64,000 bases of DNA from IMGVR_UViG_3300035698_022190:146209-210208; one strand, 5' to 3'. Shown: positions 28,493 through 60,219, counted from the first letter of the stretch. Numbers and translations: made by a program. Notes: generated from the sequence alone by a model not told the origin.

Positions 28493-28601
28493 GCTCCTTT
28501 TAGGTTAATTTAAATGACTAGTTATAATTCTTATACCATTTATATTTTAAGAAAAAATAAAGAAAAGTTGCTTTTAAAGGTATTGTATGCTATATTTAGG
28601 T

Positions 28602-28793
28602 ATGAAACCATCAGAAAAAATTTATAACGATTTGATTCGAGAGTGGAATGCCTTTGAATTAGATTACGAAAAATACTTAGAATTTGGTAACCAAGCAGCA
28701 GCACGACGTGCACGACTCTCTTTAATCAGGCTGAGAAAATTGGTGACCCCTTTTCGTTTAATAAGTGTAGCTGAATCACAAAAAAAGGGTTAG
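28602..28793 (+). CDS. Histone H1-like (Hc1-type) small basic protein
   Basis: GNQAAARRAR..L..LRKL...R..SV motif; start set after the promoter. Confidence 0.7.
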   Translation: MKPSEKIYNDLIREWNAFELDYEKYLEFGNQAAARRARLSLIRLRKLVTPFRLISVAESQKKG

Positions 28794-28794
28794 A

Positions 28795-29601
28795 ATGAAT
28801 TCATCAAAATATAAGCTTACATTAAGAAAATCTTTATTAGATTACAGAGATTGGCGTGCTGAAACAATATATAGTGCCGGACCGCTTCCTACTAAGTTTA
28901 GTTTAGAAAAGACCTTATCAAGAATAAAAGACCAAGGTAGTTTTGGGACCTGCGCAGCACAGACAGCTGCCTGCATAAAAGAAAGTCAGGAATATATAGA
29001 AGATGGCTTACTTGAGGACTTTAGTCCTATGTTTGTTTATGCACACAGAACTCCAACCAGCATAGCCGGGATGTACCCTAGAGATGTAATGAAGATTATG
29101 CAAAACTTGGGGGGCGTTGCTGAACAAGATTACCCCTACAAAGCGGCTAATAGAAATAAACAAAATATCACCACCGCTATTTACGAAGACGCCAAAAATT
29201 ATACTATTAAAAGTTATGCAAGCATATCAACAATCGATGCAGTAAAAAGAGCTTTAATAGCAGATGGCCCTGTCTTTGTAGGGCTCCCAGTATTTAATTT
29301 TGGAAATACTTTCTGGAAGGCTAATTTTGGTGACGATTCTCTTGGAGGGCATGCGGTTGCTATAGTTGGGTATGATAAAAAAGGATTTACTTTACGCAAC
29401 AGTTGGGGAACTTCTTGGGGCGATTATGGTTACGGATTCTTTCCTTATAAAGATTGGGGTGTACAATGGGAAGCATGGACAACAATTGATGACAGCTCCT
29501 TTATTATAGATAATTATAAATATAAAGCCAGCCAATCAGAGAATACAAAAAACTTTGTTTTGTTAATTCTTGAATGGATCCTAAACATTTTTAAAAAGTA
29601 A
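28795..29601 (+). CDS. Papain-family (C1) cysteine peptidase
   Basis: DQGSFGTC, GGHAVAIVGYD, RNSWG.SWG. Confidence 0.9.
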   Translation: MNSSKYKLTLRKSLLDYRDWRAETIYSAGPLPTKFSLEKTLSRIKDQGSFGTCAAQTAACIKESQEYIEDGLLEDFSPMFVYAHRTPTSIAGMYPRDVMKIMQNLGGVAEQDYPYKAANRNKQNITTAIYEDAKNYTIKSYASISTIDAVKRALIADGPVFVGLPVFNFGNTFWKANFGDDSLGGHAVAIVGYDKKGFTLRNSWGTSWGDYGYGFFPYKDWGVQWEAWTTIDDSSFIIDNYKYKASQSENTKNFVLLILEWILNIFKK

Positions 29602-32773: not shown

Positions 32774-34936
32774 ATGAGTTTTAATTTAAATAAAGTTGAG
32801 TATAAAGACCATTTAAAAGGGTTTTGAGCGGGCAATTTAATAGCTAATTGGAAAGCGTTGCCGAGCGAGTTCAAGAAATTTGAGCCACCATTTTTTACCA
32901 CAAAGGATGATATACTGTTTCCCTATAACTGGCAAGTGAACTGGAAAGCTGACGACGACAATGATATTGAGTATATGTATTTACACTTAATGAATAAACA
33001 TAAAACATTGCAGCTGTCAGCAAATCAAATTCGAGATGGATGATTAGAACATATAAACGATGATTATTTGTGGGTTGCCAATCAGCGTGCTTATGATTTA
33101 ATGAAAACAGGCATGGTTCCCCCAAGCACAGGAATGGCGTGTAATAATGAGTTTTCTGACAAGATTGATGCCCAAATAGAGTGTGAAATCTTTGGTGTAT
33201 TTTATCCCGATGAGCCACACAAGGCATTAAATATAGCAGATTTGCCAATTAGAACAGTTGGCGAAGGTATTGCTTATCACGCCTCAAGAGTTTATGTGGC
33301 GATGTATTCTTTAGCTTTAAACAGTCAATCGCCATTAGAGTTGTTAGATAAAGCAATCCAATATGGGAATGATAAAACAAGTGAGATTTATAATTCAATA
33401 AGAGTAAGTTTCAAAAATAGTTATACTTGGGAAGAAGCGAGAGATTTCTTTTATGAAGAATATCAAAAGAACAACTCTGACTACGATTGGGCGTTAGATG
33501 CTGAGATTAATTTTGGTGCTGTTCTAATTGCTCTGTTATGGGGTGAAATGGATTACAAAAAGACTGTGATGATTGGTACTCTTGCAGGATGGGATTCAGA
33601 TTGTAATGCAGTTACAGCAGGGTCATTGGTTGGATATGTAAAAGGATTCAAACATCTTGAACAGGTTTTTGGTAGAAAGATTTATACTAATTATAATATA
33701 GCAAGAACTCGTAAGAATATGCCTGATTATTTACCTAATGTAAGTGGCGCTGAAGATACTTTTGAGTTCATGGCAGATAGAATGATTAATTTTATGACAA
33801 TAGATAATGGAGATAAAATGAAAAAAGTAATATTTTGTATTGGAGACAGTAGAACTGCTGCAGGACACAGTCCTTGGTACACACCAGCTCCCGATAGTTA
33901 TCCTTTTTTCTTACAGCAAGAAATGGGGAATGGGTATGATGTTAGACAGTGGGGACAAGGTGGCACTTCTGTAACTAAGGGAGTCCATTGGAGTATCTGG
34001 GATGGTTTTGAAGGTAACCCGGCTTTGTCTTTTCAGCATTTAAAAAATGTTCAGCAAATAGAGAGTTTCTGGGATAAAGCTTTTCCTGGAATGCCTTTTA
34101 ATGAAACTGAGATAATTAACATCGTCAATTATGGTACTAATGATGCGATGAATAATAGATGGCCTACAACTAAAGCGAACTTTAAAAGGGATTACAAAGC
34201 ATTAACTTGGCTACTAAAAGGTAAAACATACCTTTGTTTACCACAGCCAACTTTTGGTACAGGTGAAGACCATGTTTATAACTCGTCAATTTTAGAAGTG
34301 CACGCATTAATAAATGAGCTTTCCAAAGAAACAGGATGCCCCACAATAGACTTTTATACAGGTACAACAGCTAGTATGTCGCCTGTTGATGGGCTACATT
34401 TCGGAGCATTAGGCAATATGCACTTTGCTAATGCAGCAAGTAAAGAATTAAAAAATGACTCACCAATAATACCACCAATAATCGGAGAACCTATGGAAAC
34501 ACCAATAATTAAAATTGAAAATAATAAACTATCCGTAACTAATTTTGATCCAACTGTTACAAATTATAGCTGGCAGTATAGTAAAACATTGCATGGTTAT
34601 GATGAATGGCTTGGTTTTGGAACAGAAATGGACATTAAGCCGAGATTCCAAATAGATGGACATTATTTCTTTTGTTACGCAAGAGATAATACCACTGATG
34701 GTAGAACACCTGATTCTAAGAGGGTGATATATAAATCAGGCGCCCCGGCCCCAATATGCGGATGCACAGATTCGGAAGCAACAAATTATAATCCAAACGC
34801 CACAGAAGATGACGGCACATGCATATACTCTAACCCCACCAATAATGATAAAGTTGTTTTAGAGATGCGAGCACATCTTTTAACTGCTACAAATGCATTA
34901 ACTGCCATTGAAGACTTATTTGATGATATTGAGTAA
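32774..34936 (+). CDS. ADP-ribosylglycohydrolase fused to SGNH/GDSL hydrolase (2 TGA=Trp)
   Basis: GF*AG..IANW, ADDDNDIEY, IRDG*L, GWDSDCN; IGDS, YGTNDA, DGLH; GCTD..A.NYNP.AT.DDG.C repeat. Confidence 0.8.
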
Positions 34937-35598: not shown

Positions 35599-36096
35599 AT
35601 GTTAAATCCTGCGACTGATAAGACACAACCTTCCGAATATACGAAGGCCCTCAAACTAAAAAATAAACTTGATATTGCTATACGCAATAAAGAGCTCCAA
35701 AACATTTCTCATAATGTTCGAGCAATGGTTGATGGAAAAGAAAGTAACAAATCTTTTGCTAAGAGTGTTAGCAAACATACCGCCACAGGTGCTGTAGTAG
35801 GCGCTGCCGCTGGTGGGGTTGCCTCTGTTCCCCTATCTTTAATATCAAAAGGTTTTAGAGGTTTAAGACATAAGCCCATTGGCATGGCTACAGTGGCTGC
35901 CTCAACTGCAATCGGTGCAGTTGCGCTTGGCGGAAATCGCCTTAGACAGGGAAAACGTCCAATTCAAATTAGACAACACGACGCAGATTTAATGCATTTA
36001 AAAGGCTTAAGACAAGAATTAAAAAACACAGAATCACCTGCTTATACAGCATATGTTAAACATAACAGAAAGTTGAGCAGGACTGTGGATGTTTAA
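35599..36096 (+). CDS. Basic protein with Gly/Ala hydrophobic hairpin (putative virion cargo)
   Basis: TATGAVVGAAAGG; leaderless start. Confidence 0.65.
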   Translation: MLNPATDKTQPSEYTKALKLKNKLDIAIRNKELQNISHNVRAMVDGKESNKSFAKSVSKHTATGAVVGAAAGGVASVPLSLISKGFRGLRHKPIGMATVAASTAIGAVALGGNRLRQGKRPIQIRQHDADLMHLKGLRQELKNTESPAYTAYVKHNRKLSRTVDV

Positions 36097-36556
36097 AGTC
36101 AATGCTGTTTCACATAAAAATTTTTCAGAAATACAAAAAGAAGTTTTAGATCAAACGATTGTTAAGCTCGAAACGGTATTTAATAGTCAAAAATTTAAAG
36201 AACAAGTAGTAAACTTTAAATGTCCTTTAACAGGAAAGGAAGAATTTCTTGAAAATTTAGGACATTCAAATGAACAGTTGTATGACAAGTTGATGAGCGG
36301 AGCCACACTCCACGTAGAAATTGATACCGACCTACCCAGTCGCAGGGTTATCGGATATACATATCCCAAAGGGGTTACAATTTATACATATAAGTGGTGG
36401 TTTGATAAATATGCAAAAAAATATTATGCTGCTCATTTAGCGCATGAATGGTGCCATAAACTAAACTTTGACCATACAGCACGTCGTAAGAAACGGTGGA
36501 AGTATACTGTACCATATATGATAGGAAATATAGTAGAAGAGTTAACTAATGAGTAA
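36089..36556 (+). CDS. Zinc metallopeptidase (HExxH)
   Basis: IGYT, LAHEWCHKLNFDH, VPY.IG. Confidence 0.75.
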   Translation: MFKVNAVSHKNFSEIQKEVLDQTIVKLETVFNSQKFKEQVVNFKCPLTGKEEFLENLGHSNEQLYDKLMSGATLHVEIDTDLPSRRVIGYTYPKGVTIYTYKWWFDKYAKKYYAAHLAHEWCHKLNFDHTARRKKRWKYTVPYMIGNIVEELTNE

Positions 36557-39200
36557 AGCCAAAGATATTTGATCTAAGACTAAAAAACAAGTTGGACAGA
36601 AAGTCGAACAGATTGAGAAAAAAGATATAGCTATTGGTACTGGTGTAGGACTTGGCGCTGGGACAATAGCCCAGAAAATAGACAAACCTAAACGTTTGTT
36701 TGCCGGTGGAGTCCATCAAGGTAAAAAATTAGTCTACTATAATCCTTTTGTAGCAAAGTATCCTTTTAAAATACAAGGTAAGTTCAAAGAGACAAAGCGA
36801 AAAATTAATCGAGCAGCTACATTTATTTCCAGAAAAAAGGCTCAGATTAGACACCCCGCAATTCCCGTTTACACAGATTCCCAAAAAATACCAAAAGGCT
36901 CGGTCGCTTATAATTACTCTGAATTAGACCTTAAGGGCGGGGGCCCAAATAGGGCTCCTGTGCATAAAAGTGTATCTGTAATTAATAATATAAAAGATTC
37001 TTCTACCTTTACTGATAAGTATAATTTACAATCTAGTAAGGCTTTTTATTCACGGGGTATTTCAACAAAAACAGAAATGTTTGATGACTATGTATCACGC
37101 AAAGTAGGGAAACCCATAAAAGATATTAGCCAGCTAGAGGCTCAAAAAGTCTTTGAAAGTGCCTCTCACAAATTTGTAAAACCACGAGTCGGAACCATGA
37201 GCCAAGGAACTTATACTTCTGGTGAGAAACTTTTAACTGAATTTGATGAGACCATCGGAAAGGGTACTAACAAAAAATCAGGTAAACCAGCTTTCTTAAA
37301 GGTTTGAAATAATAAAAAGAATTTTATTGTACAAGACAAATTAGATTTTGCTGGCAAAAAAGAATATCGTATCCATGTGGGACCAGAAGGTGTAGAGCAG
37401 ACCGGTTTTAAACGTTTTGGAAGAAGAAACCCTGTAAATGCCTTTAAACATGTGGATCAAGAATTTTTAGGAAATCTTGGGGCTGCTCATAAAGAATTTC
37501 TGAAAACTAAGGGTGAGTCAAAGAACATGGTTATTGGTTATGACGTCGCGCAGACCAAAAAAGGATGGAAGGTGGTCGAAGGTAATATTATGTCAGACTT
37601 TAAAGCAGGCGGACACTGAAGAGCAAAAAATTTAAAATTTAGACATGCTGTAACAGGAAAAGGTCTTACAGGTAAAGCTATAGGTGTAGGAGCTTTAGCA
37701 GCTGTAGGCGTAACAGCATACTCTGCATTAAAGAAAGAGGCTGCAAAGAAACGGAAAGTTTCCGGAGAAACAAAAGCCACGGCATTAATGGCAGGCGGAG
37801 CAACCACTGCTGGAACATATATTCATCTTCGTAAGCCTGATTATCACACATCAAGAAACATAGCCGCACTTCAAAGAGAATCAAAAGGTAAAGTTACTTC
37901 TTTACATTATAATACTTCAAGTAAATTCCATCAATTAGCTAATAAGGCTGTATTTGGTGGATCTATGAAACATCTTGATTCTCATAAGCTGTGGTCCCAA
38001 AGAAAAGGACCTTGAAAAAAAGGAAAGAAAAAACAAATTGAAGGTACATTATATCTTAGATCACAGAAGGGGACTGCAACAAAATGAGTACCAGATGTGG
38101 GAATTAATTTAGATCCGGGACAGCACGCAAAAAAGGGCGGCAAAGGATCAGCCTGAGGTCGTTTAATAAAAAAAGAAACATTATCTGATACCCCTGCATT
38201 GAAAGGTCTGGCAGTTGAGAATTGAGATGCTGATAGGTTTCTTGAATCGAGAGGTACTACTCGAAAAGAATTTTTGTCAAAAACAAACGATGAGTGGGAA
38301 CCGCTATTTAAAAAGTGGCATAAAGAAAAGCCAGTATTTGTTAAACAAGACAGTTCCAATATGAAGGGAGTATATGGTGATTTAGATAAAATTAGACGAC
38401 ACCAAATGAAAGACATTGGGGGAAAGAAAGTATATACCCCAATCAAAACTGACAATTATGATATTCTTAGAAAGCAATTAACTAACCCACCTAAGGCAGT
38501 AAAAGGGGCTGTTAATAGAGGCACTTTCTTTTTTGGCGCAAAGATTCCAAAGGAAATGAAAGAATATCGTGTTCACACTCTTAATGGAAAGTTTTTAAAT
38601 GCTTCTCCTCGTTGGGGTGACAAAGCTCTAACAAAATGAGAAACCAATCCAGCTAAAATTAATGAAAAATCCATTCGACAGCTTGAAGCTGGTGTAACAA
38701 AGCTCCAATATGAAGAGCTCCCCAAAGAACTAAAAAAGCATAGACAGCATAAAAGATTTAAAACCTCGCCTGCTCGAATTCGTCACAAATATTTAGGGAT
38801 GGACGTTTTTATAGACCCATCTGGAAAGCATGCTCCAAAAATAGTAGAAATTAATTCTAGTCCTATGACTGCTGGTATGCCTATGACTAATTTAAGGAAG
38901 GATCAGGTAGAAGATATATTACAACAAAATAAAAGAATTAAAGGGCCTTTACCTGATACTAAAAGCAAAGCTTATAAAAAAATTGTGCGAAAGCCAAAAA
39001 ACTTCTTACTTTTAACGAAATCTCGTTTAGGTAAAATGAAAGCACAGCATAGTGAAGCAAAAGCTTTTTATACTTCTTTGACTGGAAGAAAAGAATTTAG
39101 AAATGTAGCGGTAGCCAAAGCTGGCGTAGCTGGTTTAGCAACAATTGGATTAACAGGAGCGGCAATTCATGGCCTCAAAAAAAGAAAAAAGAACAGATAA
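36549..39200 (+). CDS. 883-aa polyprotein with two RimK-like ATP-grasp domains (8 TGA=Trp)
   Basis: Five track ORFs share one frame separated only by TGA; FVKP..G, FIVQ, KEYRIH, GYDV..VVEGN; FVKQ, KEYRVH, GMDV..IVEIN. Confidence 0.75.
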
Positions 39201-40359
39201 TTTAATTTCTGCAGCAGGCGGCACGGGTGTGGGGACAGCTGCATACTTAGGTAGCAGGTCTATTGACATCTCAAATCACTCAGATGCGACACAGCAGCGT
39301 TTAATTTCTGCTCATAAAAAACGTGGTACAGGCATTGGTTTTAGAAATAAGCCTAGAGCCCTGCTAGCTAAAGTTATATATGAGCCTAAATTTAAGTATT
39401 ATACTTTAAAGTCACAGGTACGGAAAAACCCACCAGGGGTAATGTTTAGTAAATTACTTACTAAAACTGAGGGCGGTATTACTATTAATGGCCCTAAGTT
39501 ATTTAAATCTTATCGCAAAACTTTAAGTAATAAAAAGAATTACCAAAACCTTCCGCATATTGGAAAATATTTTCCGAAAACAATGGAAATGACGGATGCC
39601 TTTGCAGAAGTTGGTATTTCAAATGTATCTAAAACCACCGATAAACAGCTTTTAAAAGGCGTAGCTGATATTGAAAAGAAACACGGTAAGTTCTTTTATA
39701 AACAAAAACCAGACTTTGATAGAAATCTAGGGCACTCAATGCGTGGAGCATACGGCCATAGTGAGGATATACCTAAGGGTGTAAAACGTACAGATATTAC
39801 TCTTTGAGACCGCGTACGAAATAAAGATGTAAGATATAAAAAAGCTCCTGACATATTAAAAACAATTAGAAAAGAAGCCCCTAATGTACTAATCAGCAAT
39901 GATTGGGGAACAGGACACAAAGAATACCGTTTAGAAATTTTGGGAGATAAGCCCACACTTCTACACCGTTTTGGTCGTAAAAAAGGAATGAAGGTTAAGA
40001 TAGACAAAGAATTAAGTGAGTCTGGAAGAGCCGGGTTAAACACATTTATTGGTGACTATAAAAAATATTTAACCAACAAAGGGGCATACAAGCATCTAGA
40101 TGAAGTTCCTTTTGTTGGCGCAGATATAATTATTCCTAAGAAAGGAAGGGTAAAAGGAGTAGAGTTACAATGGAATTCAGGTTTCCCCTTCCATGCTAAG
40201 GCAATGAAACATATGGTATCTAAACCCTATGGATCAACCGGACGCATGGCCGAATATATAACGGGACGTATTTCACATCCAAAGGCATTAGCTATAGGAG
40301 GTACTGCAGCCTTAGCAGTTGGCGGCGGAATCAAAGCGTGGAGAAGACGTAACGATTAA
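39169..40359 (+). CDS. Third ATP-grasp protein (1 TGA=Trp)
   Basis: FPKT, FFYK, KEYRLE, VGADI..VELQ..SG; hydrophobic termini. Confidence 0.7.
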
Positions 40360-41246
40360 TGAAAACTTTAGTTAAATTAGGTTTTGAGGCTGCTAAACCA
40401 CGTACGCGTCTTAGACGTGTCACGGATGTAGGCACAGCGGCCTTTGCTGGGGCCTTAACGTCACTTGTACCCGGAGTCCCTATAGGAACCGGTATAGTAG
40501 CTGGGATAGCTCCTAAGGGCCATAAAACAGAAGTGGCGGCTAAAACAACAGCTGGAGGTATACTTGCCTCAGCACCCGCAGCAATGTATGGTGTGCATAG
40601 GTTAGCTAAAGATGTCAGTAATACTAATAAAGCTGATTATATGCGCTTAATAGATCGCGGACAAGAATTATATAAAGATGTAAAGACCGGGAAAGCAGGT
40701 AAGTGAAAAACGTTAAAGTATATGATGCGTCGAAGTAAAGGGGCAACTAAGAAAATGTATGCAGCCAACATTGCCTTAGGAACAATAGGAACTGGGCTAT
40801 CATATGCTGCAGCAACAAAAAATTATTATAAAAAAGCAGAACTAACTAAGCTTGGTTTCCATCCTGAGTCTTTTACGCAACCATCTCATGAAAAAGATCA
40901 GGCCTTTCTAAATTCTTTTTCGCGTGCGGGGATTAGTGGCAAAACAAGAAAAACTTTAAATAATCCACTGACTTGGGCTTTAGGTGGTATAAGTTTATTT
41001 ATGAATCATAAAAAACGTTCAGATAATCCAGAGTCAATGTGGCCTTATTTAACTGGTGGTTTGTTAGCAGCAATATCAATAAAAAGATGAAGCAACGCAA
41101 GCAAAAGAGAAAAACAAAAATTTGTAAAAGAATATAATGCTACAATGGGCACCACTTTTACTTTAAAGCATCCTAAGATGCAATCACTTTGGAATATGAC
41201 AAATGCCCATGCAAATAGGGTAGACAGGTTTAAAGGTAATGGCTAA
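40359..41246 (+). CDS. Modular basic/hydrophobic protein with KLG/KKA motifs (2 TGA=Trp)
   Basis: Continuous frame to TAA at 41244. Confidence 0.65.
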
Positions 41247-42048
41247 ATTTTTTAAAAAAGCTGAGTATGATCCAACTAAAGTACGTCAGGCCCCTGGCTA
41301 TGATGCCGGAGCTCAATATAAACATAATAGAAACACGCCTACATCACATGCTATTAGACAATTAGGGGCAGAGTGAATTTATAGAAAACCCCCAAAAGGA
41401 GTTTTTAAAGAAAGTAAAATTCCTGTAAATCAGGGATCCCATTTAAAAACAGCCGGGGTATGGGGAAAATTTACTAATGCCTTGTCAGAAGGTTTTAAAG
41501 AAAGCGACGCTGAATTAAAACAAAGTATGAATCATGGTTGAGAGACTTTAAAAGCTCATGGTAGGTATGGTAAGCATTTGAGTAAACATAAATTTTATGT
41601 TTATAAAACGGGTCGAGAGTATGGAACGCCTCGTATTCCTTTATTAAAGCACGACATGTCAAAATTTTTACCAAGTGAATGAGTTCCCTATACTAATTTT
41701 TGAGAAGGCCCTGAGGGAGTTAAAGGTACATCAAAATCTAGAACATTAAAAACTAGATATGGTCTAGCAGCTCCAGCAGTTTACGATCGTTTTCGATCTG
41801 CAGTAGACAAACATTATAGGCGTAATCCGCACCATTATCATAAAATTGGTAGAGAACGAGAACAAGATTTTAACACCAAACTTGAGATGATAGCGGATTG
41901 ATATAGTACAAGTAGGGGCATACACGAGCAAGCCTCAGATAAACCTTTTCCGGGATTTAGAGATTGGTATGGTGGAAGACGAGCGAGTTTAAAGATTGGT
42001 CCTGAAGTCATTGCTTATATTGACAATTATCTTCTCAATTCAAAATAA
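41239..42048 (+). CDS. DUF5662-like HD-type protein absent from the ORF track (5 TGA=Trp)
   Basis: MAKFFKKA leader; HDMSKFLPSE*VPY, HYRRNPHH, EMIAD*. Confidence 0.75.
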
Positions 42049-42099
42049 CTTGTAATTATGATTAAAAACATTTATATTAAATTAAAACGAGGTTAAAGT

Positions 42100-43059
42100 A
42101 TGAAAAAAGAAGCAGGAGTAGCACAAATCGCGTCAACCGCTGTAGGATCTTTAAGTGGTGGGATAGCTGGTGGTGCAATCCAAGATAAAAGATATAGAGA
42201 TTTAAGACGAAAAGGAATTATGGTTCCTCCGGAAAAGCATACGATTAAAATAATGCAAGGTATGTTGGCCGGTGGAATGGTTGGGGCCGGTGTAGGTGCC
42301 GGGGCTGCTTCTAAAGTAACAAAGGTAGTGGCAAAAAAAGTTTCTTTAAAAGCTTTGGCAGATACAGAAGATATGTTTAAAGGATTAAAATTCAAACAGC
42401 GTAAGATTGAAAAAGAAATTTTTAATACAGCTACGAAGCAATTTAGTGGTGTTTTTCCAGAAGTAAAGGATTATAAAATGAGTAAGAGTATTAAAATGAC
42501 TCCAGAAAGGATTATAAAAGATTTTACTTCGACTACTGGCGTTAGCGCAAAAAAAATGGAAAGAGAAATGATGAATGATTTTACTGACCAAACTCTCAGA
42601 CGTATCCAAAAGAATACTGCCTTATTTAGTAAGGGAGACAGAAAAAGGTCATTCAAAGCAGCACTAAAACATCAACGAATAGAAGACATAGACAATTCTA
42701 ATATGTTGACACACATTCAGGGAAGATCAAAAAAGATTTTTGGATTTGATAAAGTTGGTCAAATTACAGAAGACCAAATAATAGAGCTAATGGCTAAAAC
42801 TGCCGCACGTTATGGAGATCAAAAGTTTAAATCACAAGTACGGGAGGTTCCAGTTTCTAAACGTATTAGTAGAGCAGCGAAAACAGTTGGGATACCATCA
42901 GCAGTAGGAACAGCTGTTCTAAATACAGCCACACTTGGCAGACATTCAATAAAATGGGGTCTTGGGGTAGGTGCAGTAGCGACTGCTTTTACCGCAGCAG
43001 TAACATCGAAGAACCAACGTGTTTTTGTTCCAGTAAATGAAAAAAAGGATTTAAAATAA
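42100..43059 (+). CDS. Modular putative virion protein (KEAG/KVG/KTAA motifs, Gly-zipper segments)
   Basis: GAGG RBS; K-x-A/G motifs separate modules. Confidence 0.65.
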   Translation: MKKEAGVAQIASTAVGSLSGGIAGGAIQDKRYRDLRRKGIMVPPEKHTIKIMQGMLAGGMVGAGVGAGAASKVTKVVAKKVSLKALADTEDMFKGLKFKQRKIEKEIFNTATKQFSGVFPEVKDYKMSKSIKMTPERIIKDFTSTTGVSAKKMEREMMNDFTDQTLRRIQKNTALFSKGDRKRSFKAALKHQRIEDIDNSNMLTHIQGRSKKIFGFDKVGQITEDQIIELMAKTAARYGDQKFKSQVREVPVSKRISRAAKTVGIPSAVGTAVLNTATLGRHSIKWGLGVGAVATAFTAAVTSKNQRVFVPVNEKKDLK

Positions 43060-43466
43060 TGAATAAACATGTACAACAAGGATTTACCGCTGCACTTATA
43101 AAAGAGGCAGTAGATACAGTGAATATTTTAGAAAAAGAAGCCCAGAAAAAAAGTAAGGGTGTTGCATCAAGTGCAGCAACGGGCGCAGCAGCTATAGGAA
43201 TTCCTGCAGCAGCAATTATGGCAGGAATAGCTTTTAAAACTAGAAAGGGCATTTTACAAAAAAGTATGAAAGGCTTACAAAACATACGTAAACATACAGC
43301 TCATGGTGGTAAACTACGGGCAACACAAATGGCTGAAAGGTCAACTGCAAAAGCCTTAAAGAGCGAAACTAAAGCACAAGCGTTAGCACTTACAGCTAAA
43401 GCCGGATTAGCTGGTATTGGCGTAGGTGGGGCTGGTGGAGCAGCAATAGGAGCTATAAAAAAATAA
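43059..43466 (+). CDS. Ala/Gly-rich putative virion protein
   Basis: GFTAALIKEA and LEKEA motifs. Confidence 0.65.
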   Translation: MNKHVQQGFTAALIKEAVDTVNILEKEAQKKSKGVASSAATGAAAIGIPAAAIMAGIAFKTRKGILQKSMKGLQNIRKHTAHGGKLRATQMAERSTAKALKSETKAQALALTAKAGLAGIGVGGAGGAAIGAIKK

Positions 43467-46178: not shown

Positions 46179-46976
46179 ATGTTCAATTTTTCTAAAATAG
46201 CAGGTTTATTAGATAAACCACAAAACCAACTGGCAGTGGATGTTTGGGATTCTAAGAAAAAACTTATACCACAACTAAAAGAGCATATACTTACAGAACT
46301 ATTCAAAATTTTACCAAAAAAGATAGTTAAGGCTGTTTATATTATTGGATCTATAACTGGATGGAAATACACCGATACCTCCGATATCGACATAAATGTA
46401 CACATCGACCCATTCGACGAAACAATGGATAAACAAAAATTAACCGGAGCAGTAAATGGTTTCTTGGGACTGGGTGGACGCCATCCTGTCAATTTCTTTG
46501 TGCAGCCATACAGAGAAGATACAGACTGGCAGGATGCTATGTTCGGTGTTTATGAAGCCCTAACAGACAAATGGATTAATGAGCCACCACAACGCTCAAC
46601 GGTTCGAGACCCAAAAAAACAGTTTGATGACGAAATAATTATGGCTAAAGCTGAAGCCAGAAGATTTGAAAGAAAAATTATAAAAGTTAAAAACGATTAT
46701 AAAAAGCTAAAAAACGTTTGTGTTTGTCCAGCACGTAGCTGGGAAATGGTATATTACCGTAGACAGCTCAAGCGTAACCTAATAAGAGATTTTCGTGATC
46801 TAGTGCGATTTGTAGATCGTGTAGAAAAAAACCGGAAAATGGTATATAGTGTTGGTTGGGGAGTGCCCCGACGCAATTACTATAATATAGTATTTAAATA
46901 TATTGAACATGGACCTAACGGAGATTTCTTCAAAAAACTACAACCACTCAATGTTGATGAAAAATTCATCCTATAA
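46179..46976 (+). CDS. Pol-beta-superfamily nucleotidyltransferase with FSKIA leader
   Basis: IIGSITG..TSDIDINV; HPVNFF. Confidence 0.75.
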   Translation: MFNFSKIAGLLDKPQNQLAVDVWDSKKKLIPQLKEHILTELFKILPKKIVKAVYIIGSITGWKYTDTSDIDINVHIDPFDETMDKQKLTGAVNGFLGLGGRHPVNFFVQPYREDTDWQDAMFGVYEALTDKWINEPPQRSTVRDPKKQFDDEIIMAKAEARRFERKIIKVKNDYKKLKNVCVCPARSWEMVYYRRQLKRNLIRDFRDLVRFVDRVEKNRKMVYSVGWGVPRRNYYNIVFKYIEHGPNGDFFKKLQPLNVDEKFIL

Positions 46977-47211
46977 AAAATACACGACCACTAAAAAAGA
47001 CGACGACAGACCACAAGATTTTGGACTAAAAGTCCATGTACATTATAACGATATTGGTGCAGTTGATGGGGCCTTACGAAGGCTTCGTAAACGTATGGAT
47101 ACAGAACTGGTTATGGAAGAATTTTATGAGCACACTTATTTTACAAAAAAAAGTACAAAAATACGTGAAAGTAGAAAAAGAAGCAAACATTTAGCTGGAT
47201 ATAAAAAATAA
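46957..47211 (+). CDS. rpsU: Ribosomal protein bS21 homolog
   Basis: KV.V....VDGALRRLRKR....V..E....YF.KKS..R..RKR. Confidence 0.75.
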   Translation: MKNSSYKKYTTTKKDDDRPQDFGLKVHVHYNDIGAVDGALRRLRKRMDTELVMEEFYEHTYFTKKSTKIRESRKRSKHLAGYKK

Positions 47212-47214
47212 TTA

Positions 47215-49884
47215 ATGTCGGATAAAAAAACTTTAGAGCTGCGTAGAAGCGATTTTGCGGAGAACTTTTTATACTTAGATGGTAGTTCATTTTCTTTAGA
47301 TGACTATCCACATATGCGTGCAATCTACAATGAGTCTGCAAAAAACATTGTTTTAAAGTTCAGTAGACAGACTGCAAAATCAACCACGTTGGCAAACATA
47401 ATGGTTGCGAACAGTGCGCTTATTCCCCATTTCCGAACACTTTATGTAGCGCCGACCGTTGATCAAACAAAAGTTTTCTCACGAGATCGTGTGTCCCCAG
47501 TATTGGAAACTTCTCCTTTAATGAAGCAACACTATATTAATAGTGCAATGCCTCAAAACGTTTTTATGAAGCAGCTTCTAAATTATAGCAAGATGTACCT
47601 TCGATATGCGCTTCTCTCAGCAGATCACCTCAGAGGATATTGCCAAACGGAGTCAGCTGAATATAATACCTTGCGTGGTTGGTTACCTGTGAATAGACTT
47701 ACAACAGATGATTATGTTTTAACAAAAAATGAAGAAACAGGCGAATTACAATATCAAAAACCTACAGATATTATTATAGACGATTATGATGGACCTATAC
47801 AGATTTACAAAACTCGTGGTAAACCTATTTTAGAAGTTACACCAAAACATCGAATTCACGCATCAATTTTAAAGCAAAAACATGTTGGAGCTCCTTACGG
47901 ATCAAAATGGACTACTGATAATAGATCTTATCAAATGCAAGATAAGAATTTCAGAATGGGTATAGGGGAGCAAGATGAAATCTTTTTTAAAGATGCTTCC
48001 CCTAAATATTTTGAGTTGCCTGGTTTAAAAACTAATATAAAAGCAAATGGGCTTCCCTACGCTAATGGAAAAATTAGAGAGTTTCCTAGTATTAAGTTGC
48101 CTATAAAAGAGTTTATGATTTTTATGGGCTGATGGCTTTCTGAGGGATGAACGAGTTTAGATAAGTGTAACTTAGGTGTAGCACAAGATAAAAAACACAA
48201 TTTAGAATATTGAAATGAAATAAAATCTATTTTTGACAAGTTATTTAAAAATAAATATACACTTGGAAAGGACAATATGTGTTTTAATTTAAATAGTGAA
48301 TGACGCACTCTTTATGAATATCTAAAGCCTTTAGGTAAATCTGGCGATAAGTATATTCCCAGAGAATTATTAACATATATAAAGTATCTTCCTGGCCTTT
48401 TAAATGCACTCTACAAAGGAGATGGCGATAATCCTTCTGTTCAAAAATTAAACCAAAAAGAGTATTTACGTTTAAATACTAAATCTAAAAAATTAGCAGA
48501 CACGACACAAGAAGCATGACTGCGTCTAGGTAAACTTGCAACTATAAACCACAGAGATCGTGAGTTCGGAAGGATATATACTGTTGAAGTGAAAACCTTA
48601 ACATATGTTAATTTTCTTTTTAATAAATATAAAAAAAATAAAGAGACACAATTCGAAGAAATTAAATATAAGGGTAAAATTTATTGTGTAACAGTGCCAA
48701 ACGGGAATTTTGTTACAAGACATGCCGTTACAAAATTACCTTTAGTTACTGGCAACTCAGCTGATTTTAATTTGTTTGACGAGGCACAAGATTTAAAACA
48801 AGATATTATTCCTGTTGTACAGGAAACTATGTCAAGATCCTTATATAAGCGGTCACTATATTCAGGAACACCAAAACGTACTAAAGGCACCTTAGCTGAT
48901 TTGTGGTACATGTCTTCTCAAAATGAATATATGTTAAAGTGTCCGCACTGCAATCATTGAAATCTTTTAGATGAAAAAAATATTGGCCCATACTTTTTAG
49001 TTTGTAATAATCCTCAATGTGAAAAGGAGCTTCGCCCAGAATCAGCACAAGGAGAATGGGTTTCCACCTATTCAAATTTAAGTGACAAACCTAATTTAGA
49101 AGGATACAGGGTTTGTTTATTACATTTTGCAACAGCCCCTTGGGTAAGCTGAGAAAAAGATGTAATGGGCAAAATGAAGACTTACTCAAAAGCTGCCTTT
49201 TATAATGAAGTTCTTGCTTTAGAATATGATCATGGAGTTGCCCCAATTACAAGAAGTGAGGTTATGGCATGTGCAGATACAGATTGGCCCATGCAAGAGG
49301 AGCCCACAGCTTTAGATAAATCTTATAAGTCTGTAATGGGCATTGACTATGGACCTGTAAATTCAACTAACTCTTATACAGTAGTCAGCGTAGTACAGCT
49401 TCGCGGTGATGGAAAATTTTACAATGTTTTTAGTAAAAGATTTGTGGGTAAAGATGCTGATTACGCTTTTATACACGATGAGATACCAAAGCTAATGAAT
49501 AAATGGGATTGTGATATTTTAGCAGCTGACTATGGAATGGGAGAAGCACCAAATAGCGAGATTCAAAAACGTATAGGTAATAAAGCTGTTATTGCTTTCC
49601 AGCACAATGCAGCACAAAAAGATAAAATGCGCTGAAATAAGGCTATGCCGGCATATACGTTAAATAGAAATCAAGCAATGAATGATATTTTTAGTTTAAT
49701 AAAACAACAAAAGATTGTATTCCCAAGATGGGAAGAGTCTCAGACTTTTCTAGAAGATATTTTAAATATTCAAACAGAATATAATGAAGAATTAGGCAAA
49801 AGTAAATATATTAATGTTGGACCAGATGACTTTTTGCACGCAACTTTGTTTGCAATTTTGTCCGCCCAAATGGCGTATGTTTAA
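47215..49884 (+). CDS. terL: Terminase large subunit (GpA-like) with intein (8 TGA=Trp)
   Basis: SRQTAKST Walker A, FDEAQD Walker B, GTP motif, CPHC, MGIDYG nuclease, PDD..HA. Confidence 0.9.
47641..48756 (+). mobile_element. Intein with LAGLIDADG endonuclease in TerL
   Basis: LRGY|CQTE ... YCVTVPNG..TGN|SAD; FMG*WLSEG, ALYKGDG. Confidence 0.88.
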
Positions 49885-51470: not shown

Positions 51471-54371
51471 ATGATTGAAAAAACCCTAAATTATATTTAC
51501 GGTGATAATGACACGGAAGTCTTCTCTGTTATGGATAATAACATGGAGAAGCGCGCGTCGTACTCATCAGAGGTTCAAGACTATCTTGATAAGTTAGCTG
51601 AGTCTCCCGATAAGACGTATGCGCTCGTAAACGCATTGTCAGCAGGTGAATATTATGGGTCTAATCGTAATGGTGACTACTTCCCCGAAAAGGCACTAAA
51701 AGATTATCACAAAACATTTGAAGCTTTAGGGCATGTATATACCCACCATGTAAATAAAGATCCAAAGAAATCCTTAGGTTCAGTAAAATTTGCTCATTAT
51801 AATCCAACTATGAAAAGGGTTGAACTGGTTCTAGAATTAGATAATGCTAAAGCTAAGCCAGTTATTGAGCGCCTTGATAAAGGGGAACTGCCAGCAGTCA
51901 GTATGGGTTGCTTTCAAGCTGGTGTAAATATTATACTTAGCGATTTTTCAAAAAAACCCATTGAGGATATTCAAGTTGGCGACGAAGTACTAACACATAC
52001 AGGGGAAATACATAAAGTAACTGAATTGCATCCAAGAGATTATGCGGGAATAATGTATACTATTAATCCTGTGGGTAAATATAGGCCTTCAATTACGGCG
52101 ACCAAAGAGCATCCGTGGCTTGTAATTGAGCCAGACAAGTTTTTTGAAAAAGACGAAAAAGCTCGATTAAGACGAAGAAAAAAACTTTCGTTAGCTGACG
52201 CTGTATGAAAAGTATCTGAAGATTTATCTACACAAGACCACCTTTTAATTCCAAAACCTAAGAACGCGGACGTGATTGACATGCCTGTAGCAAAGGCTAA
52301 GCTTTTAGGGTGGTATTTAGCAGAAGGCCACACACATATTAAAGATAATGGAGTTGAATTTACGGTAAACAGGGCAGACCAAATAGTTAAAGATATAGAC
52401 TCTGTTTTAAAAACCTTAGGCTTACCAGAAACAGTAGTTATGGCACATAATGTTTCTAAAGAAGCTTTACGGCTAATAGTTTTCTCTGCAGATTTAAAAA
52501 AAGATGTTTTATATTATTGTGGAAAGTATAGTCATAAAAAAAGATTACATAGAAAAGTTTTTTATTGGAGTGATGAAGCTAAATTAGCATTTCTAGGTGC
52601 GTATATTTCTGGAGATGGTTTTTTTCACGAAAATCAAGCATATATTAGTTCTTGTAATCGTGAACTTTTAGAACAAATTCAGTGGCTTGGTTTTTCTTTA
52701 GGAATAAACTCAACACTTGGAAAAAATGAACACAAAGCAGGAAATGGTTTTTCTTTTGAAGATACAACAGAGTATATTTTAAGGTTTAGAGGAACACATA
52801 ATAGTATACTATCTAAGTATGCTGAAAAAATTTCAACTGTAAATAAGCAAGCAGTTGGTGGCAAAGGTGGACCTTTTGAATATGAAAATTTTTATCTTTT
52901 AGCCATTGAAGAAATAAAAGGAAATGAATATACAGGTCCTGTATATAATTTTGAAGTAGATGTAGATAATTCTTATGTGGTAGAACAATATGCAGTACAT
53001 AACTGTAGAGTTCCAAAAGATACATGTAGTATATGTGGAAACGAAGCAACAAAAATCGCAAATTATTGCGAACATTTAAAAAACAACATGAACAAAGTAA
53101 TGCCAAATGGTAAAAAGGTTTATGCTATAAATAACCAACCGAAGTTTTTTGACATTAGTGTAGTAACAATCCCAGCCGAAAAGACAGCTAGTTTTATTAA
53201 AAGAATATCTAGTAAAATTAAAGCATCTTTTGCCAAATCAGCAAATGAAATAGATGTCCCATTAACGTGGGCGCAAAGCATTGCAAAAACAGCATCGCTG
53301 GAAACACAAGCAGATATTAAAAAGAAAATAGACGTAAAATTAGATGCGGTTTCTGAAGACCCAAAGAAGTTAATCTTACTGTCACAAAAAAGGTTATCTA
53401 AAGAAACTATTGAAAAGCTATCTGAACATCCATTGGGCGAAGTATTGTCCACTTTAATTGGTTTACGAATAGTACCCGTTAAAGAAGATTTTCAAAAATT
53501 AGCTTTATATAGTATGGGGAAAGCAGAGGGTGCGGAAGAGTTAGCTGAAGCAAAAGTATGTTTTGAAGTTAATCCTAAATTACGTCCTATAATACCTGCA
53601 GACGTTTCTCTTGATTATTTTAATGAAAAAATTGCCGGGTTGTTAATAGAGGATTTGCCTGGAATGGCTTTAACAAAGCCTAATATAATCTCACGCAGCT
53701 TTTATAAAGCAGCACAAGTGGGATTTACAGAGCCAATCGCTACATCGGAGGAATTAAATCAGGCTTTTCCTGAAAAATCCAAACGTGAACGGAGCATGAT
53801 TAGCAAAGTTTTCTTTGGCCAACAAGAAGATCCAAAACTTAATTCTGTTAAAAGCCCAATAATTCCTTTAGGAGTATTGGGTAGTCTATATTACGGGTAT
53901 ATAAAAACATTTAACAATGTTAATACAGGAGAGTTTAAGAAGTTTTTAGCGCGACATCCATGAGTATTTACAGCTATGTTAGGTACCGCAGCCGGTGCGT
54001 CTATATTAGCTCAGAAGCGCGCTCACGGAATACATGCTTTAGATAAGCAGGCAGGATTAGTAGAGAATGCGGGACACGTGATAGGTGGTTTACTTATTAC
54101 AGTTCCAGGTTCTTATTATGCTGCTTCGTTCCCAGAACAAAAAGCACAGCAGGGGATTCCAATCTCATCTAGTCAGAATTTTTTGAGAAAACATCCCGCA
54201 CTTGTTGCTTTAGGCGCGTCCATTCTTGGCGTAACCGGAATTGGAACAGTGACTAAACAAATGAATAAATTAAAAACTTTGAATTCTAACTGACTTAAGT
54301 TTGCCAGCGTTCTAAATCGTTTAGACGAGGAAGCTTTAAATGTTATTTATAAGGATTTAATCATAAACTAA
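51471..54371 (+). CDS. Prohead maturation protease with intein and long C-terminal extension (3 TGA=Trp)
   Basis: NRNGDYFP, HHVN.D, VSMG|C, CSICG, FFDISVV.IPA; upstream of scaffold and capsid. Confidence 0.75.
51909..53003 (+). mobile_element. Intein with LAGLIDADG endonuclease in the prohead protease
   Basis: SMG|CFQAG..PIEDIQVGD.VLTH..T.EHP; LGWYLAEG, LGAYISGDG; VYNFEV..SYVV...VHN|C. Confidence 0.9.
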
Positions 54372-60218: not shown

Positions 60219-60219
60219 T

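What the first reader, a model, noticed from the sequence alone, without database searches (positions are those of the whole stretch)
36549..40359. Three divergent RimK-like ATP-grasp ligases hidden by recoding
Seen: two genes (883 and 396 aa) carry three very basic ATP-grasp domains, each flanked by Gly/Ala hydrophobic segments and Lys-rich ends; a KKEAA linker separates the first two. They are invisible under code 11. Known: RimK-type enzymes ligate amino acids to proteins such as bS6. Inference: membrane-tethered or injected peptide ligases modifying host ribosomes or Glu-rich phage proteins. I do not recognise this as a described system.
Basis: partly seen in the sequence, partly recalled or inferred. 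Interest (0 to 1): 0.75.

Follow-up and report, generated by a model that had tools for sequence, protein, structure and literature searches.

The report
Three recoded phage ATP-grasp ligase modules
Two neighbouring genes of a 210-kb salt-lake/marine jumbo phage, readable only if TGA means tryptophan, encode three ancient copies of an ATP-grasp ligase domain from a very rare family that no database model recognises. Each copy sits between greasy Gly/Ala helices, and its target is still unknown.

Summary
Window 36549-39200 (883 aa, 8 in-frame TGA) and 39169-40359 (396 aa, 1 TGA) are open frames with no TAA/TAG. Independent metagenome runs show the same TGAs at the seven sites their contigs cover. 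Across relatives TGA aligns with Trp at 21 well-flanked sites, against 2 or fewer for any other residue.

The three modules (A, B, C) are paralogues. AlphaFold models of intact orthologues from a non-recoded relative match only ATP-grasp enzymes (VIA Z 10-11). Module B joins A/C by profile comparison (98.7 %). The linker Lys, strand-2 Lys, Glu-x-Arg, Asp and the Glu of ExN are conserved in all three; C has E-L-x-W-N instead of ExN.

No Pfam, PHROG or NCBIfam model reaches threshold. RimK is never hit. R2K_3 and R2K_2 are sub-threshold, and the family keeps the linker Lys that R2K lacks.

The family is very rare: 8 hits among 1.8 billion representatives, about seven phage contigs, and no cellular genome. 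A, B and C form separate clades, so all three have been retained.

The genes sit in a translationally coupled, TGA-containing block near the terminase, among very basic proteins with Gly/Ala hydrophobic segments.

Ligase chemistry is well supported. Membrane anchoring, virion packaging and a ribosomal target are untested.

The parts
36549..39200 (+). Gene 1, 883 aa, two ATP-grasp modules (A and B). Its start overlaps the stop of the upstream gene (ATGAGTAA).
   Evidence: Orthologue P0005 (831 aa, no in-frame stops) is 34 % identical over 867 aa, E 4e-129. L006 orthologue is 52 % identical.
36570..39807 (+). Nine in-frame TGA (Trp) codons at 36570, 37305, 37617, 38013, 38085, 38154, 38223, 38637 (gene 1) and 39805 (gene 2).
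   Evidence: Seven of the nine are confirmed in contigs of independent runs. TGA aligns with Trp at 21 well-flanked sites vs 2 or fewer for any other residue.
36627..36671 (+). N-terminal Gly/Ala-rich segment of module A (IAIGTGVGLGAGTIA); weakly hydrophobic.
   Evidence: The equivalent segment is conserved in orthologues.
36978..37586 (+). Module A catalytic core: IN (36978), linker DK (37008-37019), F-V-K-P..G.Y loop (37170-37214), Q hinge (37323-37343), KEYR (37359-37379), RFG (37410-37427), G-Y-D (37536-37547), V-E-G-N (37572-37586).
   Evidence: Motif table. The orthologous core, P0005 124-327, matches ATP-grasp structures: VIA Z 10.2 DdlA, 9.6 ITPK1, 9.0 RimK. Pfam R2K_3 E 5.7e-5, 23.8 bits, below the 26.3 cut-off.
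37677..37730 (+). Gly/Ala hydrophobic helix after module A (Kyte-Doolittle 1.45).
37731..37757 (+). Lys-rich inter-module linker KKEAAKKRK. In relative L011 a stop and a frame change lie here, so A is a separate gene there.
37782..37823 (+). Gly/Ala-rich segment that opens module B.
38100..38855 (+). Module B catalytic core: IN (38100), linker KK (38163-38174), F-V-K loop (38334-38378), KEYR (38559-38579), RWG (38607-38621), G-M-D (38796-38807), V-E-I-N (38841-38855). It has a long insert between the RWG motif and the Asp strand.
   Evidence: hhalign vs the A/C profile: 98.7 %, E 1.6e-16. Weak co-linear Pfam hits: R2K_2 and TTL on the window pieces; R2K_2 4.9e-4, YheCD 4e-3 and ATPgrasp_ST 0.013 on P0005. 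The AlphaFold model of this module is poor.
39105..39197 (+). Gly/Ala hydrophobic helix (39105-39176) and KKRKKNR end of gene 1.
39169..40359 (+). Gene 2, 396 aa, one ATP-grasp module (C). It overlaps gene 1 by 32 nt. Its stop shares one base with the next gene's start (TAATG).
   Evidence: Orthologues: P0003 46 %, P0010 45 %, L001 67 %, L006 58 %, L011 67 %.
39202..39252 (+). N-terminal Gly/Ala hydrophobic segment of module C.
39481..40176 (+). Module C catalytic core: IN (39481), linker NK (39523-39534), F-Y-K loop with a 6-residue insert (39691-39756), KEYR (39919-39939), RFG (39964-39981), G-A-D (40117-40128), V-E-L-Q-W-N (40156-40176). This last motif is non-canonical: the ExN Asn position holds Gln.
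   Evidence: AlphaFold model of orthologue P0003: core pLDDT 80-94. Foldseek PDB top 50 are all ATP-grasp, E from 3e-5. VIA Z 11.1. AFDB and Atlas hits are all ATP-grasp. Motif table.
40285..40356 (+). C-terminal Gly/Ala hydrophobic helix and the basic end KAWRRRND of gene 2.
36089..36556 (+). Upstream, translationally coupled 155-aa gene with an HEWCHKLNFDH motif (HExxHxxxxxH spacing) and a C-terminal ...EELTNE. Possible small zinc peptidase.
   Evidence: The motif is identical in L006; an orthologue is also present in L011. No Pfam or NCBIfam hit, and only an insignificant PHROG hit (E 0.015). Motif-level evidence only.
35599..36096 (+). 165-aa protein with two Gly/Ala hydrophobic segments; first gene of the cluster.
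   Evidence: Conserved in L006.
40359..43466 (+). Downstream genes 40359-41246, 41239-42048, 42100-43059 and 42954-43466. Three of the four carry Gly/Ala hydrophobic segments; none has a family match.
   Evidence: Syntenic in L001 and L006.

Best explanation
The two genes encode three paralogous, probably active ATP-grasp carboxylate-amine ligase modules. They belong to a very rare, highly divergent family seen only in a small lineage of AT-rich aquatic jumbo phages.

Shown:
- TGA is read as Trp.
- Intact orthologues of modules A and C have the ATP-grasp fold; B is homologous to them over its full length.
- The residues that bind ATP phosphates (linker Lys, strand-2 Lys), stabilise the acyl-phosphate (Arg of KEYR) and hold Mg2+ (Asp, Glu of ExN) are conserved in every module and orthologue. 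The one deviation is that module C has E-L-x-W-N.
- A, B and C are separate orthologous clades.

Inferred:
- Each module activates a carboxylate as an acyl-phosphate and joins it to an amine, forming an amide or peptide bond.
- Three retained paralogues imply three different steps or targets.
- Gene 1 has 8 in-frame TGAs, as many as the terminase, and the genes lie in a coupled operon. They are therefore probably made only once TGA is decoded, that is, late in infection.
- The Gly/Ala hydrophobic helices and basic ends around every module, shared with neighbouring genes, probably serve as a common anchoring or targeting device (host inner membrane, or the virion interior).

The substrate is unknown. 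An acidic protein tail or polymer fits the extreme basicity.

The confidence of 0.6 is for the whole statement. ATP-grasp identity alone is about 0.95, active ligase about 0.65, and anchoring or late timing about 0.5 each.
For: - Frames and TGA.
- Fold. Every top hit is an ATP-grasp enzyme, with VIA Z 10-11 over 160-180 residues.
- Paralogy.
- Catalytic motifs across 16 modules. The features follow the list in PMC4431377 section 5.
- Orthologous clades A, B and C supported at 100/99, 100/99 and 100/100.
- The gene pair is conserved in relatives L002 and L008, which have no in-frame TGA in these genes.
- TGA-containing block with the terminase (TGA counts per gene). Translational coupling.
- Hydrophobic flanks conserved in all orthologues and clustered in the genome (6 of the 11 ORFs that have them are contiguous here).
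- Basicity.
Against: - No family model reaches its threshold, so assignment rests on fold, motifs and sub-threshold hits.
- The module B model is poor.
- Module C lacks the canonical ExN Asn and could be inactive or altered.
- The pre-ATP-grasp (substrate-binding) region is low-confidence (pLDDT below 50), so nothing can be said about the substrate.
- Hydrophobic segments were scored only by hydropathy. They are marginal (KD 1.1-1.5) and Gly/Ala-rich, so they need not be transmembrane.
- Late timing is inferred from TGA content and position, not from RNA. No RNA run was found.
- ITPK-type kinases also match structurally (Z 9.6).
Confidence: 0.6

Rival explanations
1. RimK-type ribosome modifiers. 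The modules would add amino acids (for example Glu) to a ribosomal protein: host bS6, or the phage's own bS21, whose gene lies nearby. This would retune translation late in infection.
For: - Motif layout (h-x-N ... DK linker, F-V-K-P loop, E-x-R, G-x-D, E-x-N) resembles the RimK/LysX/GshB type.
- RimK structures are among the hits: Z 9.0 and 8.4-8.8.
- The nearest named language-model clusters include viral 'RimK-like' clusters, score 0.85, a lead only.
- A phage bS21 gene lies at 46909-47211, and 2 genes downstream of module C in L008.
- bS21, bS6 and bS18 form one pocket on the 30S platform (abstract of PMC9976891, listed).
- Very basic enzymes suit acidic tails.
Against: - PF08443 is never hit, even at E of 1 or less.
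- Ddl, CPS and ITPK score as well as or better than RimK.
- hhalign against E. coli RimK aligns only the Asp/ExN strand, prob 0.8 %.
- The bS21 gene is 6.5 kb away here, and such genes commonly sit next to TerL in large phages for other reasons (PMC9723584).
- No target evidence of any kind.
Confidence: 0.1
2. Members of the R2K clade (CDC123-like ATP-grasp enzymes, families R2K.2/R2K.3). These were predicted to modify proteins in phage-host conflicts and are sometimes linked to ADP-ribosylglycohydrolase genes.
For: - The best Pfam hits are R2K_3 (E 5.7e-5, 23.8 bits) and R2K_2 (4.9e-4) on P0005, and R2K_2 on a window piece.
- An ADP-ribosylglycohydrolase-GDSL gene lies 1.6 kb upstream. It is conserved there in L011, and partly in L006, where only its C-terminal part aligns. 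This echoes the R2K.2-ARG-R2K.3 operons of PMC4431377.
- R2K ligases are already noted in jumbo phages (PMC7824862).
Against: - Both hits are below the gathering cut-offs (26.3 and 26.2 bits).
- Only one of 12 members hits R2K_2, and none hits R2K_3, when scanned module by module.
- The clade-defining loss of the linker Lys is not seen: a [DNK]-K is conserved in all modules.
- The strand 2-3 loop keeps a near-canonical length and an S-x-x-G-x-Y motif.
- The second basic residue after the strand-2 Lys is not conserved.
Confidence: 0.12
3. The fold is kept but the chemistry is different or absent. The modules could be small-molecule or cell-wall ligases (Ddl-like), ATP-grasp kinases (ITPK-like), or non-catalytic structural or virion proteins built on an ATP-grasp scaffold.
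For: - Top structural hits are Ddl and CPS, with ITPK1 at Z 9.6.
- The genes sit in the TGA-containing block near the terminase, next to tail-like genes in L008.
- Module C has a non-canonical ExN.
Against: [quoted passage not shown]
- All ATP and Mg ligands are conserved across orthologues only 30-50 % identical, which is not expected of a mere scaffold.
- Ddl ranks first for many divergent ATP-grasp models, and identity is only 9-19 %.
Confidence: 0.15
4. Artefact: broken or pseudogenised genes in a standard-code phage, or assembly errors that created the TGAs.
For: Under code 11 the region is fragmented.
Against: - No TAA/TAG in 883 + 396 codons (P about 1e-22 and 1e-10).
- TGAs are identical in contigs from four runs.
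- 21 TGA-Trp correspondences and 21 shared TGAs with relatives.
- Full-length orthologues exist without any stop.
- The terminase also carries 8 TGAs.
Confidence: 0.01

Closest known systems
ATP-grasp superfamily in general (Ddl, RimK, LysX/ArgX, GshB, biotin carboxylase, CPS)
   Same: Same fold (central RAGNYA-type plus kinase-like C-terminal domains). Same set of catalytic residues: linker Lys, strand-2 Lys, Arg of the first kinase-like strand, Asp, ExN. A glycine-containing loop of canonical length.
   Different: - Identity to any solved member is only 8-19 %.
- No Pfam, NCBIfam or PHROG model reaches its cut-off.
- Every module is bracketed by Gly/Ala hydrophobic helices and basic tails.
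- Three paralogous modules sit in two genes.
- pI is 10.2.
RimK (PF08443), poly-alpha-L-glutamate ligase of ribosomal protein bS6
   Same: Motif order and spacing look RimK/LysX-like. Structures align at Z 8.4-9.0 over about 165-172 residues. Viral 'RimK-like' clusters are the commonest named neighbours in language-model feature space.
   Different: No HMM hit at all. Not the best structural match. No evidence of a bS6 target. Has hydrophobic flanks, and the modules are tandem or triple.
R2K clade (CDC123 / R2K.2 / R2K.3; Burroughs, Zhang and Aravind 2015, PMC4431377), noted in some jumbo phages (PMC7824862)
   Same: Closest Pfam profiles, though sub-threshold. Phage setting. An ADP-ribosylglycohydrolase gene nearby. 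A predicted protein-modifying ligase role.
   Different: Retains the linker Lys that R2K lacks. Retains a canonical-length loop. A and B have ExN rather than the ExGD of R2K.3. Scores are below the cut-offs.
Stop-codon-recoded phages whose lytic-cycle genes carry the recoded stop
   Same: In-frame TGA is concentrated in the block that holds the terminase and absent from most other genes. The phage carries a tRNA with anticodon UCA.
   Different: The UCA tRNA here is 98 nt with a long extra arm and scores best as tRNA-Sec, whereas alignments say TGA = Trp.

Membership tests
ATP-grasp superfamily | Two-domain catalytic module (RAGNYA plus protein-kinase/PIPK-like) forming the ATP-grasp fold. | tested here: met
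   Models of P0003 (module C orthologue) and P0005 (module A orthologue): Foldseek top 50 are all ATP-grasp, with VIA Z 11.1 and 10.2 over 160-180 residues. AFDB and Atlas agree. Module B is linked by hhalign at 98.7 %. The window's own proteins could not be folded whole because of the TGAs.
ATP-grasp superfamily | [quoted passage not shown] | tested here: met
   F-[VIY]-K is invariant in all modules (K178 of P0003 is the only invariant column; table).
ATP-grasp superfamily | Asp in strand 4 and ExN at the end of strand 5 (Mg2+ ligands). | tested here: met
   G-x-D is invariant. E-x-N is present in all A and B modules. C modules have E-L-(Q/A)-W-N: the Glu is kept and the Asn sits two positions downstream. 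So this is met for A and B and deviant for C.
ATP-grasp superfamily (amide-forming ligase clade) | [quoted passage not shown] | tested here: met
   K-E-[YFI]-R is present in all modules. Feature as defined in PMC4431377 section 5.
ATP-grasp superfamily | ATP-dependent carboxylate-amine ligation. | not testable with these tools
   Needs biochemistry.
RimK family (PF08443) | Match to the family HMM above the gathering score. | tested here: not met
   PF08443 is absent from all scans, including at E of 1 or less. hhalign of the family profile vs E. coli RimK aligns 27 columns, prob 0.8 %.
RimK family (PF08443) | [quoted passage not shown] | not testable with these tools
   No substrate evidence. 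A phage bS21 gene nearby is only a hint.
R2K clade | Match to R2K_2 or R2K_3 above the gathering score. | tested here: not met
   23.8 bits vs 26.3 and 20.4 bits vs 26.2 on P0005. One of 12 members hits R2K_2 at E 0.045, and none hits R2K_3. No first-look candidate in the genome with stops read through.
R2K clade | Loss of the Lys in the linker between the pre-ATP-grasp and RAGNYA domains. | tested here: not met
   A Lys, preceded by D, N or K in most modules, is conserved in all modules 9-14 residues after the I-N motif. Its linker position is inferred from motif spacing and from the model's helix at residues 114-128, not from a ligand-bound structure.
R2K clade | Variable strand 2-3 loop lacking ssxGbGl, with a second conserved K/R just after the strand-2 Lys. 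| tested here: inconclusive
   The loop is mostly 9-10 residues with S-x-x-G-x-Y. A K or R at position +2 is present in some modules (KPR, KPK) but not in B or several others.
TGA-to-Trp recoded phage (genetic code 4) | In-frame TGA in conserved genes, aligning with Trp in relatives. | tested here: met
   21 Trp vs 2 or fewer of any other residue at well-flanked sites, plus 21 shared TGAs. The terminase has 8 TGAs.
TGA-to-Trp recoded phage (genetic code 4) | Phage-encoded suppressor tRNA with anticodon UCA. | tested here: inconclusive
   A tRNA(UCA) exists at G000:C1:65786-65883. It is 98 nt with a long extra arm, and its best Rfam match is tRNA-Sec at 32.5 bits, below the cut-off of 47.

The most novel reading that the evidence does not exclude
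The three modules form a phage-made, membrane- or particle-anchored peptide-ligase assembly line that becomes translatable only after the phage switches TGA to Trp. It would build a defined amino-acid tag in three successive, non-redundant steps. The target would be a translation component (phage bS21 or host bS6 on the 30S platform) or co-encoded Gly/Ala-zipper proteins. The adjacent HExxH protein and the upstream ADP-ribosylglycohydrolase would act as trimming or erasing partners. This would be a new phage post-translational modification system.
Probability: 0.1. Interest if true: 0.8.

Novelty: new variant of a known kind. Interest (0 to 1): 0.5.

Why it matters
Phage ATP-grasp ligases that modify proteins have been predicted (R2K, RimK-like) but hardly studied.

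This is a clean case of a family that standard annotation misses twice over. Code-11 gene calling fragments the genes, and even the intact orthologues escape every Pfam, PHROG and NCBIfam model.

Several features suggest a dedicated late-infection modification machinery rather than a stray metabolic gene:
- strict retention of three paralogues;
- the conserved hydrophobic bracketing that the neighbouring genes share;
- the extreme basicity;
- the position in the TGA-containing block near the terminase.

The family gives a defined set of enzymes to test for new protein or polymer modifications in phage-host biology. It also shows that recoded phage genomes hide recognisable enzymology.

Tried and rejected
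- Pfam and PHROG on the stop-free pieces gave only insignificant hits.
- R2K_2 and R2K_3 profiles against the phage genome with stops read through gave no first-look candidates.
- The search for related loci with the module A piece found nothing.
- tblastn of two pieces against 50,697 GenBank phages found nothing.
- The search for homologous proteins with a module C piece returned only the window's own fragment.
- Family profiles against PDB sequences gave nothing significant.
- hhalign of the family profile against single E. coli RimK and DdlB sequences aligned only short motifs correctly (prob 0.8 % and 2.3 %), so it is too weak to map residues.
- The whole-protein model of P0005 was poor for module B, so B's fold rests on homology.
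- The search for related loci with alignments failed or chose poor patterns. A motif scan then found only two metagenome contigs, one viral contig and no cellular genome.
- No similarity was found between the neighbours of the distant relatives L002, L003 and L008 and the window's neighbours, so no conserved partner gene could be named beyond the close relatives.
- The RNAP beta-prime gene adjacent in L002 lies about 95 kb away in this genome. I rejected it as a linked partner.
- The HExxH protein has no family hit.
- No RNA-seq run holding the region was found.


Full report
What the window is.
- The window is bases 146209-210208 of a single 210,208-bp IMG/VR virus record that CheckV rates complete.
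- The genome is 36.7 % G+C. It carries 25 ordinary tRNAs, a tmRNA and a tRNA with anticodon UCA.
- The region recurs in salt-lake and marine metagenomes.
- Reading TGA through, the window has about 76 ORFs. In-frame TGA is absent from most genes. It is concentrated in the plus-strand block 30.9-54.4 kb, which holds the terminase large subunit (8 TGA) and the two genes of the finding (8 and 1 TGA).

The observation.
- Frame 36549-39200 has eight TGA and no TAA/TAG. Frame 39169-40359 has one TGA.
- The other frames of the same stretch hold 57-128 stops. By local base composition the chance of such open frames is about 1e-22 and 1e-10.
- Contigs from four independent runs, one of them marine, cover seven of the nine TGA sites without a difference.
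- I compared the window with its recoded relatives L006 and L001 and with L002 and L008, whose orthologues of these genes carry no in-frame TGA. At well-flanked sites TGA aligns with Trp 21 times, with TGA 21 times, and with any other residue at most twice. The sites include the conserved V-E-L-Q-W-N and P-R-W-G motifs of these very genes. Code 4 is therefore the right reading.

Three paralogous modules.
- Module A (gene 1, residues 1 to about 403) aligns with gene 2 (module C) over 326 residues at E 3.5e-8.
- Module B is more divergent. Its profile aligns end to end with the A/C profile: hhalign 98.7 %, E 1.6e-16, 331 columns.
- No further copy exists in the genome.

Relatives.
- A full HMMER scan of 1.84 billion cluster representatives, using a profile of the catalytic halves, found only eight proteins. 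A word-indexed search added four.
- They map to about seven distinct phage contigs of 32-36 % G+C:
  - L001 (= L012 = L013): syntenic, recoded.
  - L006 (with the near-identical L007): syntenic, recoded.
  - L011: syntenic, recoded.
  - L002: orthologues intact.
  - L008: orthologues intact.
  - L003.

- A scan with the most conserved motif found no copy in one genome for each of 185,579 prokaryote species. tblastn found none in 50,697 GenBank phages.
- L002 keeps the same pair as intact genes of 831 aa (A+B, 34 % identical, E 4e-129) and 389 aa (C, 46 %). In L011, A is a separate ORF and B is split over two frames.
- A maximum-likelihood tree places A, B and C in three separate clades with support 100/99, 100/99 and 100/100. 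The triplication is therefore older than the divergence of these phages, and every copy has been kept.

Fold.
- The tools take no protein read through a stop, so I folded the intact orthologues.
- P0003 (module C type), with a 15-row alignment, gave a core (residues 110-330) at pLDDT 80-94.
- Foldseek's top 50 PDB hits for it are all ATP-grasp enzymes: Ddl, biotin carboxylase, RizA, PsnB, PurK (E from 3e-5, prob about 1).
- VIA-align gives Z 11.1 to DdlA over 165 residues. AFDB Swiss-Prot, AFDB clusters and the ESM Atlas also return only ATP-grasp proteins.
- P0005 (A+B) modelled well only for module A. Residues 124-327 match DdlA (Z 10.2), ITPK1 (9.6), RimK (9.0) and LysX/ArgX (8.8).
- Module B's fold rests on homology and on weak but co-linear Pfam hits: R2K_2, YheCD, ATPgrasp_ST and TTL.

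Catalytic residues.
- I checked the feature list in PMC4431377 section 5 against an alignment of 16 modules.
- The linker Lys, usually D-K or N-K, lies 9-14 residues after a near-invariant I-N. It is present in all modules.
- The strand-2 Lys (F-V/I/Y-K) is invariant.
- The Arg typical of amide-forming ligases (K-E-Y/F-R) is present in all.
- The Asp (G-x-D) is invariant.
- ExN is present in all A and B modules. C modules carry E-L-(Q/A)-W-N: the Glu is kept, the canonical Asn position is variable, and an Asn two residues downstream is conserved.
The identification stands.

Family placement.
- No member reaches the gathering score of any Pfam ATP-grasp family. PHROGs and NCBIfam return nothing.
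- RimK (PF08443) is never hit. 'RimK-like' is true only in the loose sense of motif layout, structural similarity at Z 9, and weak language-model neighbours.
- The best Pfam scores are R2K_3 (23.8 bits, cut-off 26.3) and R2K_2. But the family keeps the linker Lys whose loss defines the R2K clade, and it keeps a near-canonical strand 2-3 loop.
- I therefore file it as a new, very divergent family of the ATP-grasp superfamily. It is not a member of RimK or R2K.

Context and likely role.
- The genes are translationally coupled: ATGAGTAA at the start of gene 1, a 32-nt overlap between genes 1 and 2, and TAATG at the end of gene 2.
- Upstream lies a 155-aa protein with an HExxHxxxxxH motif that is conserved in L006; an orthologue is also present in L011. 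No family matches it.
- Further upstream are an ADP-ribosylglycohydrolase-GDSL fusion and a DNA ligase.
- Downstream are four unknown genes. Then come a nucleotidyltransferase, a bS21 homologue (46909-47211; 29.7 bits against a cut-off of 27) and the terminase.
- Gly/Ala-rich hydrophobic segments occur in only 11 of 291 ORFs of the genome. Six of those ORFs are contiguous at 35.6-43.5 kb.
- The same bracketing, a hydrophobic helix at each end followed by basic residues, is conserved in every orthologue. It also appears in unrelated neighbour genes of L002, L003 and L008.
- I infer a shared anchoring or targeting device.
- I also infer expression only after TGA decoding is available, that is, late in infection alongside the terminase.
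- Both are inferences. No transmembrane predictor, RNA data or proteomics was available.
- The ARG neighbour recalls the R2K-ARG operons that led Burroughs et al. to propose protein targets.
It is weak, because bS21 commonly sits beside TerL in large phages.

Verdict.
- The observation and the fold assignment are confirmed.
- Ligase chemistry is well supported for A and B and plausible for C.
- The target, the location and the timing remain inferences.
- This is a new variant within a known enzyme superfamily, with an unusual and conserved architecture. It is of moderate interest.

Noticed in passing
window 46909-47211 (+): A 100-aa homologue of ribosomal protein bS21 (PF01165, 29.7 bits, cut-off 27) lies directly upstream of the terminase on the same strand. 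L006 has it in the same place. L008 has one 2 genes downstream of its ATP-grasp gene.
   Followed up: partly
outside the window: G000:C1:65786-65883 (locus L014:187-284): The only tRNA with anticodon UCA is 98 nt with a long extra arm and a weak anticodon stem. Its best Rfam match is tRNA-Sec (32.5 bits, below the cut-off of 47). Alignments nevertheless say TGA = Trp, and the phage also has a normal tRNA-Trp(CCA). How TGA is decoded as Trp is unexplained.
   Followed up: partly
window 36089-36556 (+): A 155-aa protein, translationally coupled to gene 1, carries HEWCHKLNFDH (metzincin-like HExxHxxxxxH spacing) and ends in ...EELTNE. The motif is identical in L006; an orthologue is also present in L011. 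No family match.
   Followed up: partly
window 32774-34936 (+): A 720-aa fusion of ADP-ribosylglycohydrolase (PF03747, E 6e-23) and a GDSL lipase/acylhydrolase, with 2 in-frame TGA. It is conserved upstream of the ATP-grasp genes in L011, and partly in L006, where only its C-terminal part aligns.
   Followed up: partly
window 35599-43466 (+): A cluster of six genes whose products carry Gly/Ala-zipper-like hydrophobic segments. These account for 14 of the 20 such segments in the whole genome. None of the non-ATP-grasp members has any family match.
   Followed up: partly
window 47215-49884 (+): The terminase large subunit is 889 aa with 8 in-frame TGA. The L006 orthologue aligns its residues 130-485 to window residues 503-857, so the window copy seems to carry an insertion of about 370 aa (intein or homing element?).
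   Followed up: no
window 51471-54371 (+): A 966-aa ORF with 3 TGA contains a LAGLIDADG homing-endonuclease domain (PF14528, E 2.5e-11). This is probably an intein or inserted endonuclease in a structural gene.
   Followed up: no
window 28578-29601 (+): A papain-family cysteine protease (PF00112, E 1e-17) at 28795-29601. In L006 the small ORF before it carries a precomputed Hc1 histone-like hit.
   Followed up: no
window 59259-63009 (+): A GT1 glycosyltransferase, followed by a 929-aa fusion of a TibC/heptosyltransferase-like GT9 and an FkbM methyltransferase. The phage may glycosylate or methylate something.
   Followed up: no
L011:3382-5865: In this relative, module A is its own ORF, with a stop and frame change at the A-B linker. 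Module B is split between two frames at about residue 605. This is either a frameshift or sequencing error, or a real split.
   Followed up: no
L002:1-3618: In the distant relative, a multisubunit RNA polymerase beta-prime-like gene (Rpb1 domains) lies two genes upstream of the ATP-grasp pair. In this genome the beta-prime-like gene is at G000:C1 about 85.8-89 kb, far from the window.
   Followed up: yes
genome ends (G000:C1:341-391 and 210158-210208): The last 50 bases of the record recur at positions 341-391 of its start. This may be an assembly overlap or a short direct repeat.
   Followed up: no
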